A stretch of 16,489 nt of DNA, taken from contig NW_021825236.1 of NCBI RefSeq assembly GCF_006345805.1, positions 1-16,489 of the forward strand. Reading direction: 5' to 3'. Shown here piece after piece: positions 611-15,141 of the stretch (within the stretch, counting starts at the first letter, position 1; the number at the start of each line of letters is the position of its first letter). The notes beneath the pieces were generated by a model. That model was given only the letters and a program-made list of their open reading frames with translations. It was not told where the DNA came from and searched no databases. Made by a program: the position numbers and the translations under genes. Source of the DNA: Octopus sinensis (Eukaryota).

Positions 611-659
611 ATTATTATATATATATATATATATATAATATATATATATGTATGTAGAT

Positions 660-710
<51 letters not shown>

Positions 711-799
711 TGTATGTATATATAAATATATATATACATATATATATATATATGTATGTATATATAAATATATATATATATATAATATATATTATATAT

Positions 800-832
<33 letters not shown>

Positions 833-844
833 GTATGTATATAT

Positions 845-888
<44 letters not shown>

Positions 889-1013
889 TATATATAATTA
901 TATAGTATATTATATATAATATAATATACTATATATATCTGTATATTATAAATCTATATATATATATATATAATATATATATATATATATAGGGAGAGAG
1001 AGAGAGAGAGAGA
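611..1013. repeat. Interrupted (TA)n microsatellite followed by (GA)n
   Basis: Direct reading: TA run with TATG/TAA interruptions about 611-990, then (GA)n about 993-1013. Confidence 0.95.
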
Positions 1014-2364: not shown

Positions 2365-2401
2365 CTATAGTTGTATTGAAGTAATATTAAGGTTACTGTT
2401 A

Positions 2402-2814
2402 GGGCAGCAAGCTGGCAGAATCGTTAGGACGCCGGGCGAAATGCTTAGCGGTATTTCGTCTGCCGTTACCTTCCGAGTTCAAATTCCGCCGAGGTTGACT
2501 TTGCCTTTCATCCTTTCGGGGTCGATTAAATAAGCACCAGTGACGCACTGGGGTAGATATAATAGACTTAATCCGTTTGTCTGTTCTTGTTTGCCCTCTC
2601 TGTGTTTAGCCCGTTGTGGGTAGTAAAGAAATAGGTATTTAGTCTGCCGTTATGTTCTGAGTTCAAATTCCGCCGAGGTCGACTTCGCATTTTATCTTTT
2701 GGGATCGATTAAATAAGTACCTGTTACGCACTGGGTCGATGTGATGGACTTAATTCTTTTGTCTGTCCTTGTTTGTCTCCTCTATGTTTAACCTCCTGTG
2801 GGCAATAAAGAAAT
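2402..2814 (+). mobile_element. SINE family B, dimeric copy (head + body + repeated body)
   Basis: tRNA-like head AGCTGGCAGAATCGTTAG...GAGTTCAAATTCC (B-box-like GTTCAAATTC). Unit 1 ends GTAAAGAAATA at 2633; unit 2 restarts at GGTATTT (2634) and ends GGCAATAAAGAAAT. Confidence 0.9.
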
Positions 2815-2836
2815 CAATATATTTATGAATTATCAA

Positions 2837-3259
2837 GGGCGGTAAGCTGGCAGAATCATTAGCACGCCAGGTAAAATGCTTAGCCGTATTTCTTCTGCCG
2901 CTACGTTCTGAGTTCAAATTCCGCCGAGGTCGACTTTGCTTTCATCCTTTCGGGGTCGATTCAATAAGTACCAGTTACTCACTGGGGTCGATGTAATCGA
3001 CTTAATCCGTTTGACTGTCCTTGTTTGCCCCCTCTGTGTTTAGCCCCTTGTGGGTAGTAAAGAAATAGGTATTTCGTCTGCAGTTATGTTTTGTGTTCAA
3101 ATTCCACCGAGGTCAACTTTGCCTTTCATCCTTCTGGGGTCGATAAATTAAGTACCAGTTACGCACTGGGGTCGATGAAATCAACTTAATTCTTTTGTAT
3201 GTCCTTGTTTGTCCCCTCGATGTTTAGTCTCTTGTGGATAATAAATAAATAAATAAATA
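2837..3259 (+). mobile_element. SINE family B, second dimeric copy with (AAAT)n tail
   Basis: Same architecture; unit junction AGAAATA|GGTATTTCG at 3067/3068; (AAAT)n about 3241-3259. Confidence 0.9.
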
Positions 3260-3281
3260 TTAAGATTACTATTATGTCTCT

Positions 3282-4081: not shown

Positions 4082-4623
4082 CAGGGTGTCCACAAAGTCT
4101 GGGAACATGGAATACATAAAATCATAACATAGGCGCAGGAGTGGCTGTGTGGTAAGTAGTTTGCTAAGCAACCACATGGTTCTGGGTTCAGTCCCACTGC
4201 GTGGCATCTTGGGCAAGTGTCTTCTGCTATAGCCCTGGGCCGACCAATGCCTTGTGAGTGGATTTGGTAGACGAAAACTGAAAGAAGCCTGTCGTATATA
4301 TGTATATATATATGTATATGTATGTGTGTGTCTGTGTTTGTCCCCCGAGCATTGCTTGACAACCGATGCTGGTGTGTTTACGTCCCCGTCACTTAGCGGT
4401 TCGGCAAAAAGAGAACGATAGAATAAGTACTGGGCTTACAAAGAATAAGTCCCGGGGTCGATTTGCTCGACTAAAGGCGGTGCTCCAGCATGGCCGCAGT
4501 CAACTGACTGAAACAAATAAAGGTAAGGAAAGGAAAAGGAAAGGAAATGAATTAAATATAAGAAATAATAATTTCTTAAAGTATGTGTTAATCCCCATGA
4601 TCCCAGACTTTGTGGATACCCTG
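4082..4623. mobile_element. Tc1/mariner-type MITE with 29-bp TIRs and TA target duplication, interrupted by a SINE
   Basis: Left TIR CAGGGTGTCCACAAAGTCTGGGAACATGG (4082-4110); right TIR 4595-4623 reverse-complements to CAGGGTATCCACAAAGTCTGGGATCATGG (27/29 identical); TA at 4080-4081 and 4624-4625. Confidence 0.92.
4132..4522 (+). mobile_element. SINE family A, full length (tRNA-like head, CORE-like segment, internal microsatellite, stem-loop tail)
   Basis: A-box-like TGGCTGTGTGG, B-box-like GGTTCAGTCCC, CTTGGGCAAGTG core-like motif, internal (TA/TG)n, tail GGCGGTGCTCCAGCATGGCCGCAGTCAACTGACTGAAAC; at least six related copies in the window. Confidence 0.93.
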
Positions 4624-6110: not shown

Positions 6111-6670
6111 AAATAGAGAAGGCCTGTGCCATGTGTTTATGCGTGGAGTGCTTTCTCTTGCGTGTTGTATGTGATGTGTATATACTCTGTATGTATGTGT
6201 GTGTGTGTGTGTGTGTATGGTGTTGTGTGTGTGTGTGTATGGTGTTGTGTGTGTTTGCGTAGGTCATTACATGTGAATATTTCGCGTTTGGTTTCTGTGT
6301 GTGTGTGACTCGGTCGTGTGTGTCACGTCGCGTATTTTATTGGGTGTTCGATGTTGAGTATATATTCTGCGTTGTATGTCAACGGATACTCATATCTGAG
6401 TGAGTGCAAGGATGTGCAGCTGCATTTTGACTTTGCATTTATAAACATTGCGTGTGTGACAGAGTGAAAAATGAGGGAAAGAGAGAGAGAAAGAGAGAGA
6501 AAGAAAGAGAATTATTGTTTATGCACACATACATACATGTATATAAAGTGCATAGTGACACACACATCTGTATCCAAACACACGTACACACGTACACACA
6601 TACACACATGTATACATATACGTAAATAGGCATAAGAACATAAACATCTATGTGTGTATATATATATATA

Positions 6671-6770
6671 CAATCGGTTAGCGCGCCGTACTTATAGACA
6701 GTACCTTGTTTGTGTTGTTCACAAAATAGGAGATATGCGGAGGTTGTGAGTTCGAGCCTCACACAGGGCA
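6671..6770 (+). pseudogene. trnI-UAU: tRNA-Ile(UAU) with 38-nt intron, lacking its first ~12 nt (5'-truncated pseudogene or retrocopy)
   Basis: D loop AATCGGTTA + GCGC; anticodon stem CCGTA(6686-6690)/TGCGG(6736-6740); loop CT-TAT-A with anticodon 6693-6695; intron 6697-6734 at the canonical 37/38 site; variable loop AGGTT; T arm GTGAG-TTCGAGC-CTCAC; acceptor 3' strand ACAGGGC + discriminator A6770; TTTTT at 6773-6777. The 5' acceptor strand is replaced by (TA)n. Confidence 0.88.
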
Positions 6771-6781
6771 GATTTTTAAAC

Positions 6782-6838
6782 GGCGGTGCATCAGCATGGC
6801 CGCAGCTCTGAGCTGAAACTAGAGAAAAAAAAAAAAAA
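6782..6838 (+). mobile_element. Variant family-A-type 3' tail with poly(A)14
   Basis: GGCGGTGCATCAGCATGGCCGCAGCTCTGAGCTGAAAC, then A14 at 6825-6838. Confidence 0.8.
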
Positions 6839-6855
6839 TATATATATATTTATTT

Positions 6856-6924
6856 AAGGTAGTGCTCCAGCATGGCCGCAGTCAAAATGACTGAAACAAG
6901 TAAAATAGTAAAAGAGTAAAAGAA
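6856..6924 (+). mobile_element. SINE family A isolated 3' tail (5'-truncated copy)
   Basis: AAGGTAGTGCTCCAGCATGGCCGCAGTCAAAATGACTGAAACAAGTAAAATAGTAAAAGAGTAAAAG. Confidence 0.85.
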
Positions 6925-6925
6925 T

Positions 6926-6968
<43 letters not shown>

Positions 6969-6979
6969 ACATTTGTATA

Positions 6980-7424
6980 GGCGCAGGCGTGGCTGTGTGG
7001 TAAGAAGCTTGCTTCGGTTAACCACATGGTTCCGGGTTCAGTCTCACTACGTGGCAACTTGGGAAAGTGTCTTCTACTATAGTCTCTGGCCGACCAAAAA
7101 TCCTTGTGAGTGGATTTGGTAGACGGAAACTGAAAGAAGCCCGTCGTATACATTTATATATATGTATGTGTGTACGTATGTATATTTGTGTGTGTGAGTG
7201 TGTATATATGTGTGTGTTTTGTCCATCCTCTACCATTGTTTGATAACCGATGCTGGTGTGTTTACGTCCTCGAAGCTTAACGGTTCGGCAAAAGAGATGA
7301 TAAAACAAGTACTAGACTTACAAAGAATAAAATTCCGGGATCGCTTTGCTCGACTAAAGGTGGTGCTCCAGCATGACCGCAGTCAAACGGCTGCAAGAAG
7401 TAAATGAAGACAAGAGTAAAAGAA
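6980..7424 (+). mobile_element. SINE family A, full length
   Basis: Head GGCGCAGGCGTGGCTGTGTGGTAAG...GGGTTCAGTCTC, internal microsatellite and tail, colinear with 4132-4522. Confidence 0.92.
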
Positions 7425-7639
7425 TGTATATAGACAAAACATACGCAAATGTTTACATCATAGACGTATAAACACACAAACATTTAGCAGTAGAGAAGAA
7501 TATTCTTCTGTGCGGCTGCATACGTACATACACGAATAGATATTCCCCTCACACACACACACATACATACATGTATTCACATCAACACATACACACACAC
7601 TCGCTCGGTAAACAGGAAACTGCAGCAGCTTCCGAAGGC

Positions 7640-8905: not shown

Positions 8906-8951
8906 TAACGTATACGTATACAGAGAAATAGACATTCATTTATACATTTAT

Positions 8952-9142
8952 TCATTTACTTGTTTCAGTCGTTTGACTGCGGCCATGCTGGATCACCGCC
9001 TATAGACGAACAAATCGACTCCAGGACTTATTCTTTGTAAGCCTTGCGCTTATTCTGTCCGTCTCTTCTGCCGAACCGCTAAGTTACGGGGTGTAAACAC
9101 ATCAGCATCGGTTGTCAAGCGATGGTGGGAGGTGGACAAGCA

Positions 9143-9179
<37 letters not shown>

Positions 9180-9340
9180 GTATATATACGACGGGCTTCT
9201 TTCAGTTTCCGTCTACCAAATCAACTCCGCAGGGCGTTGGTCGGCTCGACGCTATAGTAGAAGACTGCAGACGAACGTGCCACGCTGAGGAACTGAACCC
9301 GGAATCCTGTGGTTCGGAAGCAAGCTTCTTACCACGCAGC
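8952..9340 (-). mobile_element. SINE family A, near full length, minus strand
   Basis: Reverse complement of tail, body and head; the first ~12 nt of the head are lost into (CA)n. Confidence 0.9.
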
Positions 9341-10125: not shown

Positions 10126-10369
10126 TATGAGTGTGGGTGCGTGGAAAATGTGCACTCACACACAGACACACATATAGACATAATTGCGTATTCAGGCAGA
10201 TATATGTATACACGTACACGCTCATATACAAACAGAGATGTATATATACACACTTATACATACATAAACGTATTTCATACACATACATATATAGTAATAC
10301 ACACACACACACACATACATGCACAACCACATGCAAGCTTGAATATACATTTCCACATACATAGCTAAA

Positions 10370-10420
10370 TTCTGATTGATCGAGACACTTCCATTTGTGC
10401 CCACCCAACCTTGTCTATTC
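10370..10420 (-). repeat. 51-bp inverted copy of 12083-12133
   Basis: Reverse complement is identical to 12083-12133 except one base (12091). Confidence 0.95.
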
Positions 10421-10595: not shown

Positions 10596-10799
10596 CGAGG
10601 TGGGGGTCTTGGAAAGTGCCTCATTTAAAGGGCATCGCGAACGCCCTTCAGAGTTCTTTTGCAGGGTTTAGAGAAACTGTAGACCTGCTACAATGCGTGC
10701 GTGAATCTGAGGGGGTGAATATGTTGAATAAATTCATAAATAAGGGATCCTCCTGTATTTCATTTTACCCAAAGCCAGGAACTTTACAGTGCCCCTTCG
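10596..10799 (+). mobile_element. Mariner internal-deletion derivative (MITE-like), copy 1
   Basis: TA|CGAGG...CCTTCG|TA ends with imperfect TIRs; interior encodes a broken GLEKL*..NACVNLRG(E)YVE* mariner C-terminus; homologous to 11038-11493. Confidence 0.8.
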
Positions 10800-11036
10800 T
10801 ATGTATGTATGTATGTATGTATGTATGTATGCATGCATGTATGTATGCATGCATACATACATACATGCATGTATGTATGCATGCATGTATGTATGTATGT
10901 ATGTATGTATGTATGAATATATGTATGTATGCATGTATGTATGTATGTATGCATGTATGCATGCACGTATGTATGTATGTATGTATGTATGTATGTATGT
11001 ATGTATGTATGTATGTATGTATGTATGTATGCATGT
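10800..11036. repeat. (TATG)n microsatellite with TGCA variants
   Basis: Direct reading; starts at the TA flanking the MITE. Confidence 0.95.
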
Positions 11037-11037
11037 A

Positions 11038-11493
11038 AAGGTGGTGCTTTAAGGGTATCACAATAGGCAAGGCGCCGAGCTGGCAGAATCGTTAGCACGC
11101 CGGGCGAAAAGCGTAGCCGTATTTCGTCTGCCGATACGTTCTGAGTTCAAATTCCGCCGAGGTCGACTTTGCCTTTCATCCTTTCGGGGTCGATTAAATT
11201 AAGTACCAGTTACGCACTGGGGTCGATATAATCAACTTAATCCGTTTGACTGTCCTTCTTTGTCTCCTCTGTGTTTGGCCCCTTGTGGGCAGTAAAGAAA
11301 TAGGTATCACAAAAGGCTGGCTGGAGGCCCAAACTTCCGAGTTCTTTTATAGGGCTTAGAAAAACCGAAGGACCGCTGCAATAAGTGTGTGAACCTAAGA
11401 TGGGGATATGTTGAATAAAATCATAATTAAGTGATCCCCACCCCTGTATATCCTTTTAACCAAAGCCAGGAAGTTTCCAGCATCGCCACCTCG
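11038..11493 (+). mobile_element. Mariner internal-deletion derivative, copy 2, split by a family B SINE
   Basis: 11353-11418 reads GLEKPKDRCNKCVNLRWGYVE*, matching the mariner transposase C-terminal pattern; right TIR CCAAAGCCAGGAAGTTTCCAGCATCGCCACCTCG; left TIR shortened. Confidence 0.82.
11071..11302 (+). mobile_element. SINE family B monomer with 10-bp TSD
   Basis: Well-preserved head and body; GGTATCACAA at 11054-11063 and 11303-11312. Confidence 0.93.
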
Positions 11494-11971: not shown

Positions 11972-12150
11972 GGAAGCCACCGTGTGGAAGCTAGAGCTGC
12001 TCGAAATAGCAGTCAAAATCCTACGCGCAATCGGCGGTATAACAGCTTGTAAGAAGGACTTTGTGCATGATGCAGCTACGCAGAATAGACGAGGTTGGGT
12101 GGGCACAAATGGAAGTGTCTCGATCAATCAGAACCAGCCTTAGACTTCCA
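11972..12150 (+). mobile_element. Diverged family C copy
   Basis: GTGGAAGCTAGAGCTGCTCGAAATAGCAGTC is 25/31 identical to 7650-7680; contains the other arm of the 51-bp inverted repeat. Confidence 0.55.
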
Positions 12151-12683
12151 TAGCAACCAAAACACAATCACAAGTGCAACAGCAACAATAACAACAAAAA
12201 CAAAAACAAAAACAAATGCAGTTGTAGCAACATCAGCAATGAAGCGAGAACAGTTACTTGATGGCGTGACCTGTTAAATACAGCAGTTAAATGACACAAC
12301 AGCATCATTGATAATGAGCAAACGACAGAGCGAGTAGTATTCCTTCGGTATTGGTCTCCAGCGCGTCAATGTGAAGAGAAAACGTTATCCACCCTTTTTA
12401 TTTTCTACTAGCCTAGCCTTTTGATCTATGTCACGAGGAAAGGTCGTATGGGTGAATGACGTATGTACCAATACCGAAGGATTGCCCAGTGTGTATAGTT
12501 CAGTCTGGTTCGGTCTGGTAAATATATGAACCAAATTTCAATCAATATCATGTCGTATTCCAATAATGAAGTAAACATTCTCAACAACGCCTTCCGAGAT
12601 ACACAACTGAACGCGATGGCTATGGTTGGAGTGCCTTTGATTCTTTTGAAAAGGACATCTGATACACGTACACACGCGTACAG

Positions 12684-12994
12684 CACTAGTACTTATTCTA
12701 TCGGTATCTTTTGCCGAACCGCTAAGTTACAGGGACGTAAACACACCAGTATCGGTTGTCAAGTGATGTTGGGGGGACAAACACAGACACACAAAAATAT
12801 GCACACACATACATAGGTATATACATATATACGACGAGCTTCTTTGAGTTTCCGTCTACCAAATCCACTCGAAAGGCTTTGGTTGGCCCGAGGCTATAGT
12901 TGAAGACACTTGCCTAAGATGCCACGCAGTGGGACTGAACCCGGAACCATGTGGTTAGTGAGAAAGCCACTTACCACACAGCCACTCCTGCGCC
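12684..12994 (-). mobile_element. SINE family A, minus strand, lacking the 3' tail
   Basis: Ends CTTACCACACAGCCACTCCTGCGCC (reverse complement of the head); body colinear. Confidence 0.92.
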
Positions 12995-13035
12995 TATAAA
13001 GTGATGTTGCACGTATTTTGCATACATACACATAC

Positions 13036-13434: not shown

Positions 13435-13825
13435 GATTCCAAATATTGGCACAAGGACAGCAAGTATGTGGGGTGGTGGCGAGAAGTCAATCACATCGAC
13501 TTCCAGTGCTTATTTTATTGAACCCGAAAGGATGGAAGGTAAAGTCGACCTCGGCGGAATTTGAACTCAGAACGTAAAGATAGATGAAATGCTTATTTCT
13601 TTACTACCCACGAGGGGCTAAACACAGAGAGGACAAACAAGGACAGAGAAAGGGATTAAGTCGATTACATCGACCTCAGTGCGTAACTGGTACTTAATGC
13701 ATCGACCCGGAAAGTATGAAAGCAATGTCTGCCACGGGTGAATTTGAACTCAGAACGTAAAAACAGGCGAAATACCGCTAAGCATTTCGCCCGGTGTACT
13801 ACCGTTTCTGCCATCTCACCGCCTT
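13435..13825 (-). mobile_element. SINE family B dimer, minus strand, with alternative tail on unit 2
   Basis: Unit 1 ends GTAGTAAAGAAATA (13594); unit 2 restarts AGCATTTC (13593) and ends ...GCTGTCCTTGTGCCAATATTTGGAATC. Confidence 0.88.
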
Positions 13826-13846
13826 ACTAATAGTAACTATATTATT

Positions 13847-14008: not shown

Positions 14009-14407
14009 CTCTTTTACTTGTTTCAGTTATTTGACTGCGGCCATGTTGGAGCAACGCCTTTAGTCGAGGAAATCGATCCCAGGATTTATTCTTTGTAAGC
14101 CTAGTACTGAGTCAATAGGTCCATTTTGCTGAACAGCTAAGTTACGGGGATGTAAACACACCAGCATCGGTTGTCAAGTGATGTTGGGTTGGAGGTGGGA
14201 CAAACACAGACACGCAAACATATATATATATATATACATATGTACGACGGGCTTCTTTCAGTTTCCGTCTACCAAATCCACTCACAAGGATTTGGTCGGC
14301 TCGAGGCTACAGTAGAAGACACATGCCCAAGGTGCACCGCAGTGGGACTGAACCCAGAACCGTGTGGTTGGTAAGCAAGCTACTTACCACACAGCCACTC
14401 CTGCGCC
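14009..14407 (-). mobile_element. SINE family A, full length, minus strand
   Basis: Reverse complement of tail through head, ending CCACTCCTGCGCC. Confidence 0.93.
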
Positions 14408-14409
14408 TA

Positions 14410-14466
14410 TGATAGTAGTAGTAGTTGTTGTTGTTGTTGTAGCAGTAGTAGTAGTAGTAGTATTAT

Positions 14467-14505
<39 letters not shown>

Positions 14506-14530
14506 CAATAATAATGATAATAATAATAAC
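14410..14530. repeat. (TAG)n/(TTG)n/(TAA)n microsatellite
   Basis: Direct reading. Confidence 0.92.
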
Positions 14531-14698
14531 AAAGATGATCAAGTTTACGTGTCATCGTATGGAGATCGATAAACACGAATACCAGTTGAGCGCTCGCTTA
14601 TTCTGCTAGAATATCAGGCTTGGTACCTACGGTAGGAAGAATTATCTGGCCATTATTCTTTTTCTGAATGTAAGCCTTTCTTTGTCGTTAACAATGAA

Positions 14699-14751
14699 AT
14701 CATCATCATAATCATCATCATCATCATCATAATCATCATCATCATCATCAT

Positions 14752-14790
<39 letters not shown>

Positions 14791-14811
14791 AATCATCATC
14801 ATCATCATCAT

Positions 14812-14844
<33 letters not shown>

Positions 14845-14865
14845 AATCATCATCATCATCATCAT

Positions 14866-14900
<35 letters not shown>
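14699..14900. repeat. (ATC)n with periodic ATA interruptions
   Basis: Direct reading; run lengths 10,6,10,6,12,6,6,3 read from the poly-Met frame. Confidence 0.95.
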
Positions 14901-15000
14901 GTATTAGTAATAGTAGTAGTATTCAATTCGGTACAATGCAAGAGATTTTGAGGGATGGTGTTGATCGAATGTACTTTACATCATCGACCCCATAGGGAGG

Positions 15001-15096
15001 AAAAACAACAACAACAACAACAACATAATAATAGTAATAATAATAATAATATAATAATAATAATAATAATATAATAATATAATAATAATAATAATG

Positions 15097-15141
<45 letters not shown>

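What the first reader, a model, noticed from the sequence alone, without database searches (positions are those of the whole stretch)
6671..6849. Unspliced pre-tRNA-Ile(UAU) fused to a SINE/LINE-type stem-loop tail and poly(A): candidate new retroposon or chimeric retrocopy
Seen: a tRNA-Ile(UAU) from position 13 onward with paired anticodon stem (CCGTA/TGCGG) and T arm. Its 38-nt intron has C32 (6691) opposite the antepenultimate intron G (6732), the anticodon-intron pair used by eukaryotic splicing endonuclease, and an internal hairpin (TTTGTG/CACAAA, CCT/AGG). Eleven nt after the discriminator comes a variant family-A tail, then A14, and the whole unit sits between (TA)n runs. Known: 5' truncation plus poly(A) is typical of target-primed reverse transcription, and most tRNA-derived SINEs have decayed, intronless heads. 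Inference: a read-through pre-tRNA acquired a LINE-recognised tail and was retroposed, either as a nascent SINE or by RT template switching. TTTTT at 6773-6777 would normally stop Pol III, which favours a chimera or occasional read-through.
Basis: partly seen in the sequence, partly recalled or inferred. Interest (0 to 1): 0.75.

Follow-up and report, generated by a model that had tools for sequence, protein, structure and literature searches.

The report
Pre-tRNA-Ile fused to SINE tail retrocopy
A 168-base insert in octopus-type repeat DNA joins an unspliced, 5'-shortened isoleucine tRNA precursor to the tail of a local mobile element and a poly(A) run; it is most likely a one-off by-product of reverse transcription, showing how new short mobile elements could start but not proving a new family.

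Summary
Bases 6671-6770 are tRNA-Ile(UAU) from position 13 to the discriminator. It has a 38-nt intron at the canonical 37/38 site, followed by GA+T5, AAAC, a 43-nt two-hairpin tail and A14. (TA)n runs abut both ends.

The exons from position 13 to 65 are identical to intact tRNA-Ile(UAU) genes of other marine eukaryotes. Only the 3' acceptor strand differs.

Three features favour one retroposition event of a chimeric RNA or cDNA, most likely a reverse-transcriptase template switch from a tail-bearing SINE/LINE RNA onto a nascent pre-tRNA:
- The tRNA part ends exactly at its Pol III terminator.
- The only flanking direct repeat (12-14 nt) brackets the whole unit, not the tail alone.
- A14 is the only A/T homopolymer of 10 or more in 16.5 kb.

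The tail is not a decayed copy. Its second hairpin carries two compensatory pair swaps and recurs at an unrelated Octopus vulgaris/sinensis locus.

A new SINE family is neither supported nor excluded, because no host genome could be searched. The internal T5 and the lost A box make this copy a poor master element.

This is a new instance of a known kind, of moderate interest.

The parts
6657..6670 (.). (TA)7 directly abutting tRNA position 13. It is the 5' copy of the candidate target-site duplication, or the left half of a (TA)n target.
   Evidence: The best flanking direct repeat (12 nt exact, 14 nt with one mismatch) pairs this run with 6838-6851.
6671..6696 (+). tRNA-Ile(UAU) 5' exon remnant, positions 13-37. 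It holds the 3' half of the D arm, the anticodon stem 5' strand CCGTA and the loop CTTATA. Positions 1-12, with most of box A, are missing.
   Evidence: ARAGORN with prosthesis. (identical to L001/L002 genes).
6697..6734 (+). 38-nt intron at the canonical 37/38 site. It starts GACAGTACCTT as in four intact genes of other eukaryotes, has G at -3 opposite C32, and contains an internal hairpin.
6735..6770 (+). tRNA-Ile 3' exon, positions 38-73. It holds the anticodon stem 3' strand TGCGG, the variable loop, an intact T arm/box B (AGTTCGAGCCT), the unusual 3' acceptor strand ACAGGGC and the discriminator A.
6771..6777 (+). Natural 3' trailer GA plus the T5 Pol III terminator. This is the expected 3' end of the primary transcript.
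   Evidence: The same GATTTTT follows the intact gene in L001, and the other genes have 2-5 nt followed by T4-5.
6778..6781 (+). Junction AAAC. AAA corresponds to the TAAAG that precedes hairpin 1 in the standard SINE, and C6781 extends hairpin 1.
6781..6802 (+). Tail hairpin 1 (CGGC-G-GUGC AUCA GCAU-G-GCCG), of the standard SINE tail type.
   Evidence: MFE fold, z=-2.8 for the whole tail..
6803..6824 (+). Tail hairpin 2 (CAGCU CUG AGCUG) plus GAAACTAGAG. This is the 'type B' variant, with two pairs swapped relative to the standard CAGUC/GACUG.
   Evidence: The same variant occurs at an unrelated O. vulgaris / O. sinensis locus.
6825..6838 (+). A14 tail.
   Evidence: the only A or T homopolymer of 10 nt or more in the 16,489-base window.
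6839..6851 (.). (TA)5.5 then TT. It is the 3' copy of the candidate target-site duplication.

Best explanation
The stretch 6671-6838 is one retroposed insert, dead on arrival, lying in a (TA)n microsatellite of an Octopus-type genome. It is a bipartite chimera.

Proposed mechanism (inferred, not shown):
1. A LINE reverse transcriptase began target-primed reverse transcription on an A-tailed RNA carrying the two-hairpin 3' tail used by the local SINE/LINE families.
2. It copied only about 47 nt of that RNA.
3. It then switched template onto the 3' oligo-U end of a nascent, unspliced and untrimmed pre-tRNA-Ile(UAU).
4. It copied the precursor back to position 13, and the cDNA was then joined to the target.

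Shown:
- The anatomy of the unit.
- The tRNA part has gene or precursor features: an intron, a trailer and T5.
- The flanking repeat brackets the whole unit.
- The tail belongs to a recurrent, structurally conserved type.

Inferred:
- That the joining was at the RNA/cDNA level by template switching.
- That the event was a single one.
- That the copy is inert, because box A is truncated and T5 lies before the tail.
For: (1) The tRNA-derived part ends exactly at the end of its own terminator (GA+T5, 6771-6777). Tail homology starts within 0-4 nt of that point. Intact tRNA-Ile(UAU) genes have the same short trailer plus T4-5, and L001 has an identical GATTTTT. This is the expected 3' end of a Pol III primary transcript, as with the small Pol III RNA partner of U6/L1 chimeras formed by template switching (PMC4476161).

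(2) The best direct repeat flanking any candidate insert is 12 nt exact or 14 nt with one mismatch, and it lies at 6657-6670 and 6838-6851. That brackets tRNA+tail+A14 as one unit. No repeat of 6 nt or more fits a tail-only insert starting at 6765-6790.

(3) Only 39 (TA) runs of 10 nt or more exist in 16.5 kb. The chance that a given point abuts one is about 0.24%.

(4) A14 is the only A/T homopolymer of 10 or more in the window. The five standard SINE copies end in (AGTAAAAG)n-like repeats instead.

(5) The tail folds into the same two hairpins as the standard tails. Hairpin 2 differs by two double-sided pair swaps (T-A/C-G to C-G/T-A). The same hairpin-2 variant with GAAACT.G occurs at an unrelated locus beside rhodopsin in O. 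vulgaris and O. sinensis. The tail therefore comes from a real tail lineage.

(6) Exon positions 13-65 carry no change relative to functional genes, which fits a recent copy of a functional gene's transcript.

(7) Published context. Template switching from SINE RNA onto a tRNA has been proposed for PittSINE (PMC5729268). It has also been proposed generally for SINE origins, and pre-tRNA retropseudogenes are reported in human (PMC4476161). Sense and antisense tRNA/L1 chimeras with target-site duplications exist in primates (bioRxiv 10.1101/2025.02.02.635956). O. vulgaris has recently active CR1, Dong-R4, RTE and L1-Tx1 LINEs (PMC13282606).
Against: The intron, trailer and terminator are equally what a resident gene looks like, so none of them proves an RNA intermediate.

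The flanking repeat is low-complexity (TA)n in a window where 4.2% of bases are (TA)n. The one other type-B tail found is also followed by (TA)n. The 3' run could therefore reflect target preference or microsatellite birth rather than a duplication.

Copy number and the orthologous site could not be examined.

The 3' acceptor strand (ACAGGGC) differs at 3-4 of 7 positions from all four comparator genes, while the other 53 exon bases are identical. This is unexplained unless the host's own gene has that stem.
Confidence: 0.5

Rival explanations
1. This is a copy of a propagating or source-locus element. In one version, a young SINE family has an unspliced tRNA-Ile(UAU) gene as its head. In the other, a single source locus has a tRNA-Ile gene directly upstream of a tail fragment, and occasional read-through of T5 (or a Pol II transcript) yields a tail-bearing RNA that the LINE machinery retroposes. 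This copy would be a 5'-truncated offspring.
For: The retroposition hallmarks are the same as for the best explanation. The tail is a functional recurrent type. O. vulgaris is reported to have about 900 young SINE families, most of them unclassified (PMC13282606).
Against: T5 lies between head and tail and should terminate Pol III before the tail (established Pol III biology). A source locus would itself need a tail-only insertion exactly at the terminator. No second copy was found in the window or in 72 kb of Octopus DNA sampled, but that sample is tiny. The antisense-ORF search found no copy, but a calibration with the abundant SINE shows that route has no power.
Confidence: 0.2
2. This is a resident tRNA-Ile(UAU) gene remnant plus an unrelated insertion. 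A real gene lay here and a 5'-truncated tail+poly(A) retrocopy landed just past its terminator. Separately, the first 12 nt of the gene were lost next to an expanding (TA)n array.
For: The intron, the natural trailer and T5 are gene features. 5'-truncated tail-only copies do occur nearby, for example 6853-6926. (TA)n arrays are common in the window. A T5/AAA site resembles AT-rich endonuclease targets.
Against: It needs three coincidences: a tail insert exactly at the end of T5, a deletion ending exactly at a (TA)7 run, and the same (TA)n after A14. No target-site duplication exists for a tail-only insert. No unique upstream gene flank survives.
Confidence: 0.2
3. The arrangement is an assembly or DNA-level artefact. 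Possible causes are a mis-join in repeat-rich sequence, or non-homologous repair, gene conversion or segmental duplication that juxtaposed a tRNA fragment and a SINE tail.
For: The region is dense in microsatellites and SINE fragments, which are hard to assemble. The odd acceptor strand is unexplained.
Against: The junctions are clean. The pieces have the order, orientation and ends expected of retroposition. There are no Ns or duplicated blocks around the unit.
Confidence: 0.07

Closest known systems
Bipartite chimeric retrocopies made by LINE RT template switching (U6/L1 and other small-RNA/L1 chimeras; tRNA/L1 chimeras in primates)
   Same: A small Pol III RNA sits at the 5' side, in sense orientation, and ends at its natural 3' end. 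It is fused to a 5'-truncated retroelement 3' end with an A tail. One target-site duplication surrounds the whole (PMC4476161; bioRxiv 10.1101/2025.02.02.635956).
   Different: The 5' partner is an unspliced pre-tRNA with trailer, not a mature snRNA or tRNA half. The primate tRNA/L1 chimeras are mostly antisense halves. The 3' partner is only the ~47-nt stem-loop tail of a cephalopod SINE/LINE lineage, not L1. The host is an octopus-type genome.
Proposed origin of tRNA-derived SINEs, and SINE head exchange (PittSINE from TguSINE1)
   Same: [quoted passage not shown]
   Different: Only one 5'-truncated copy is known here. It has an internal T5 and has lost box A, so there is no evidence it founded a family. 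Known SINE heads are intronless.
Pre-tRNA / tailless tRNA retropseudogenes of mammals (Schmitz et al. 2004, as cited in PMC4476161)
   Same: A retrocopy of a nuclear tRNA precursor, which implies nuclear recruitment of the template.
   Different: Those retropseudogenes lack any tail or poly(A). This one carries a SINE/LINE tail and A14.
The ~400-bp tRNA-headed SINE of the window (copies at 4128-4521, 6977-7431, 8928-9340, 12678-12998, 14010-14411)
   Same: It shares the two-hairpin tail ...GGCGGTGC.YCAGCATGGCCGCAG..CTGAAAC.
   Different: It has a different head and no ~300-nt body in common. Its hairpin 2 is of the other type, and it ends in (AGTAAAAG)n rather than A14.

Membership tests
Functional tRNA-Ile(UAU) gene | Complete cloverleaf with both acceptor strands and a full D arm | tested here: not met
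   Positions 1-12 are absent. ARAGORN and Rfam find no tRNA in the native sequence.
Functional tRNA-Ile(UAU) gene | Anticodon UAU with an intron at 37/38 and an anticodon-intron pair (C32 with intron G at -3) | tested here: met
   ARAGORN with a 5' prosthesis calls Ile(tat) with a 38-nt intron. Positions were read directly. The intron starts the same way in four intact genes.
Functional tRNA-Ile(UAU) gene | Internal Pol III promoter (box A and box B) and a downstream T run of 4 or more | tested here: not met
   Box B (6749-6759) and T5 (6773-6777) are present. Box A positions 8-12 are deleted.
tRNA-derived SINE family | Many dispersed copies with different flanks | not testable with these tools
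   No cephalopod genome collection is available. No second copy was found in the window or in 72 kb of Octopus loci. The protein-index route has no power, because the abundant SINE gave only one hit.
tRNA-derived SINE family | LINE-recognised 3' tail | tested here: met
   The two-hairpin tail is shared with the local SINE. It carries compensatory changes and recurs elsewhere. The partner LINE itself was not identified.
tRNA-derived SINE family | Pol III transcript can run from head through tail (no internal terminator) | tested here: not met
   T5 at 6773-6777 lies between head and tail.
Template-switch bipartite chimeric retrocopy | Two unrelated transcripts in the same orientation, with the 5' partner ending at its natural 3' end | tested here: met
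   The pre-tRNA ends with trailer+T5, and the tail follows within 0-4 nt.
Template-switch bipartite chimeric retrocopy | One target-site duplication around the whole chimera, and none around either part | tested here: met
   A 12-14-nt repeat lies at 6657-6670 and 6838-6851. No repeat fits the tail alone. Caveat: the repeat is (TA)n.
Template-switch bipartite chimeric retrocopy | A-rich 3' end and 5' truncation typical of target-primed reverse transcription | tested here: met
   A14 is unique in the window. The copy is truncated at tRNA position 13.
Template-switch bipartite chimeric retrocopy | Empty orthologous site, or insertion polymorphism | not testable with these tools
   The window's ORFs are not indexed. 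The orthologous locus could not be fetched.
Tailless pre-tRNA retropseudogene | No poly(A) or retroelement tail | tested here: not met
   A tail and A14 are present.

The most novel reading that the evidence does not exclude
The unit is one 5'-truncated copy of an undescribed, young Octopus retroposon family. Its head would be a complete, still intron-containing tRNA-Ile(UAU) gene with its trailer, and its tail the 'type B' stem-loop. It may insert preferentially into (TA)n microsatellites. That would be a SINE caught at birth, before the intron and terminator are lost.
Probability: 0.12. Interest if true: 0.7.

Novelty: new member of a known kind. Interest (0 to 1): 0.35.

Why it matters
tRNA-derived SINEs are thought to arise when a LINE reverse transcriptase jumps from a tail-bearing RNA onto a tRNA, but fresh intermediates are rarely seen. 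This locus would be such an intermediate, in a cephalopod genome where SINEs are a major and still active fraction.

It also implies that the template was a nuclear, unprocessed Pol III transcript carrying its intron, trailer and oligo-U. That bears on where the reverse transcriptase picks up bystander RNAs.

As a single, inert copy it has no functional consequence. Its value is as a mechanistic snapshot and as a search key for related loci.

Tried and rejected
tRNA detection:
- Rfam at gathering and E-value thresholds gave nothing usable. The tRNA model scored 15 bits at E=5.5 on a mis-registered stretch, and the other hits were microsatellite-like miRNA noise.
- ARAGORN on the native sequence found no genes.

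Searching for further copies:
- I used the fully open antisense frame of the unit as a 52-aa 'protein' query. It returned only four intact tRNA-Ile genes from other organisms.
- As a calibration I queried the very abundant standard SINE in the same way. It returned one hit, so the null result carries no weight.
- Exact look-ups of 11 window ORFs were not on record.
- A metagenome scan with the variant-tail 18-mer gave 44 unrelated bacterial hits, and a viral scan gave 4.
- Scans of genome contigs and viral contigs with a T-arm+acceptor 21-mer and with the standard tail 25-mer gave no hits.
- A full-text search for the tail motif in papers gave no hits.

Other analyses:
- CpG decay as an age gauge was rejected. 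The window's CpG observed/expected ratio is 0.9, so there is no depletion to measure.
- For the type-B tail, the orthologous O. bimaculoides site falls in an assembly gap of Ns.
- MAFFT misaligns hairpin 2 of the variant by one column. I therefore read pair changes from the folds rather than from the count of structure pairs.

Models considered and rejected:
- A TRAMP-polyadenylated pre-tRNA retrocopy would lack the tail.
- A SINE body interrupted by the unit is ruled out, because no SINE head or body lies upstream of 6657.

Full report
**Setting.** The window is AT-rich (38% GC), dense in microsatellites, and has no credible protein-coding ORF. It carries five copies of a ~400-bp tRNA-headed SINE, at 4128-4521, 6977-7431, 8928-9340, 12678-12998 and 14010-14411. 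These copies end in ...GATTTGCTCGACTAAAGGCGGTGCTCCAGCATGGCCGCAGTCAAATGACTGAAACAAGTAAAAGAG followed by (AGTAAAAG)n-like repeats. The same SINE hits the flanks of the Octopus vulgaris rhodopsin gene at 82-86% identity, so the window comes from an Octopus-type genome.

**Checking the observation.**
- 6671-6696 is tRNA-Ile(UAU) positions 13-37.
- 6697-6734 is a 38-nt intron at the canonical 37/38 site.
- 6735-6770 is positions 38-73.
- C32 (6691) can pair with the antepenultimate intron base G6732.
- The anticodon stem (CCGTA/TGCGG) and T arm (GTGAG/CTCAC) are intact.

No tool calls a tRNA in the native sequence. When 12 nt complementary to the 3' acceptor strand are supplied, ARAGORN returns tRNA-Ile(tat) with exactly this intron.

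Using the open antisense frame of the unit as a query, I retrieved four intact tRNA-Ile(UAU) genes from other marine eukaryotes: L001, L002, L051 and L052. All have a 35-nt intron starting GACAGTACCTT and a 2-5-nt trailer followed by T4-5. The window's exon positions 13-65 are identical to L001 and L002. Only the 3' acceptor strand differs: ACAGGGC against CYGGAGC. This is unexplained unless the host's own gene carries that stem.

**The 3' part.** After the discriminator come GA+T5 (6771-6777), which is identical to the trailer and terminator of L001, and then AAAC. A 43-nt tail follows, and it folds into the same two hairpins as the standard SINE tails.
- Hairpin 1 is of the standard type.
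- Hairpin 2 is CAGCU/AGCUG instead of CAGUC/GACUG. Two adjacent pairs are swapped, with changes on both strands, so the stem is preserved.
- This hairpin-2 variant, together with GAAACT.G, recurs beside an unrelated sequence in the rhodopsin flank of O. vulgaris and O. sinensis. It is therefore a real tail lineage, which I call type B, and not private decay.
- The tail ends in A14, the only A or T homopolymer of 10 nt or more in the window.

**One insert or two events.** A systematic search for direct repeats between any left boundary from 6600 to 6800 and the sequence after A14 gives its best result at 6670/6671. The repeat there is 12 nt exact, or 14 nt with one mismatch. No repeat of 6 nt or more fits a tail-only insert.

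The repeat is (TA)n, which covers 4.2% of the window in 39 runs. The chance that a given point abuts such a run is about 0.24%. The tRNA-derived part stops exactly at the end of its terminator, where a Pol III primary transcript ends, and tail homology begins within 0-4 nt of that point.

A resident gene with an independent tail insertion would need three things:
- an insertion exactly at the terminator with no target-site duplication;
- a 5' deletion ending exactly at a (TA)7 run;
- the same (TA)n run after A14.

One caveat applies. The other type-B tail is also followed by (TA)n. The 3' run may therefore reflect a target preference or microsatellite birth. Even so, a (TA)7 abutting tRNA position 13 still points to insertion of the whole unit into (TA)n.

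**Mechanism (inferred).** I propose the following sequence.
1. Target-primed reverse transcription started on an A-tailed RNA bearing the tail.
2. After about 47 nt, the reverse transcriptase switched to the oligo-U 3' end of a nascent pre-tRNA-Ile(UAU).
3. Synthesis stopped at position 13.

The cDNA reads through positions 58, 37 and 26, where mature tRNAs usually carry RT-blocking modifications (general knowledge). Together with the retained intron and trailer, this fits an immature nuclear precursor.

The mechanism is established for U6/L1 chimeras and has been proposed for SINE origins and SINE head exchange (PMC4476161, PMC5729268). Pre-tRNA retropseudogenes and tRNA/L1 chimeras are known in primates (PMC4476161; bioRxiv 10.1101/2025.02.02.635956). 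O. vulgaris is reported to have recently active CR1, Dong-R4, RTE and L1-Tx1 LINEs and hundreds of young SINE families (PMC13282606).

RNA ligation before reverse transcription, or read-through at a source locus, are variants that I cannot separate from template switching.

**A new SINE?** This could not be tested. None of the searchable collections holds cephalopod genomes, and the abundant standard SINE itself is almost invisible in them. The anatomy of this copy is unfavourable for a master element: box A is truncated and T5 would stop Pol III before the tail. I give about 0.12 to the reading that it belongs to a young, intron-retaining tRNA-Ile SINE family.

**Verdict.**
- The chimeric-retrocopy interpretation is supported by internal evidence, with a probability of about 0.5 for a one-off template-switch product. 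Adding the family or source-locus rival (0.2) gives about 0.7 for any single-event retroposition.
- The new-family interpretation remains open.
- The resident-gene rival is not excluded (about 0.2).

It is a new instance of a known kind, and a tidy snapshot of the step thought to create SINEs. Interest is moderate.

Noticed in passing
window 6853-6926: A second tail-only fragment, of the standard tail type (AAGGTAGTGCTCCAGCATGGCCGCAGTCAAAATGACTGAAAC + (AGTAAAAG)3), lies 14 nt after the unit. It is followed by (CA)23 and a full-length SINE at 6977. Two 5'-truncated tails and one full copy therefore sit within 800 bp.
   Followed up: partly
window 6763-6769: The 3' acceptor strand ACAGGGC differs at 3-4 of 7 positions from four intact tRNA-Ile(UAU) genes (CYGGAGC), while the other 53 exon bases are identical. 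It is either a lineage-specific acceptor stem or something unexplained.
   Followed up: partly
L054 about 7250-7340 (O. vulgaris OX597836.1, minus strand) and the orthologous L055 (O. sinensis): A type-B tail CAGCATGGCCACAGCTCGTAAGCTGAAACTGG + (GAAAT)n + (AT)7 abuts an antisense fragment of the window's second SINE family. Both type-B tails seen are followed by (TA)n, which hints at a (TA)n-targeting partner LINE or at microsatellite birth from the tail.
   Followed up: partly
window 2401-3268; also 11078-11307 and 13506-13846 (minus): A second SINE family has a B-box-like GAGTTCAAATTCC and ...GGTCGACTTTGCCTTTCATCCTTTCGGGGTCGAT.... At 2401-3268 it forms a tandem pair with a 434-bp period at 86% identity, and has an internal 184-bp periodicity.
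   Followed up: no
window 10368-10420 and 12083-12135: A 51-53-bp inverted repeat at 98% identity, with arms 1.7 kb apart (TTCTGATTGATCGAGACACTTCCATTTGTGCCCACCCAACCT...). It may be the terminal inverted repeats of a DNA transposon. No obvious target-site duplication was seen.
   Followed up: partly
window 616-991, 10799-11037 and 14413-15141: Very long microsatellites: (TA)~194, (GTAT)60, and a block of trinucleotide arrays consisting of (TAG)31, (ATC)67 and (ATA)40.
   Followed up: no
L002 (ENA marine metagenome contig): The same contig carries a tRNA-Asn(GTT) gene about 900 bp from the tRNA-Ile(UAU) gene. It is an ordinary eukaryotic tRNA cluster in a 'metagenome' contig.
   Followed up: no
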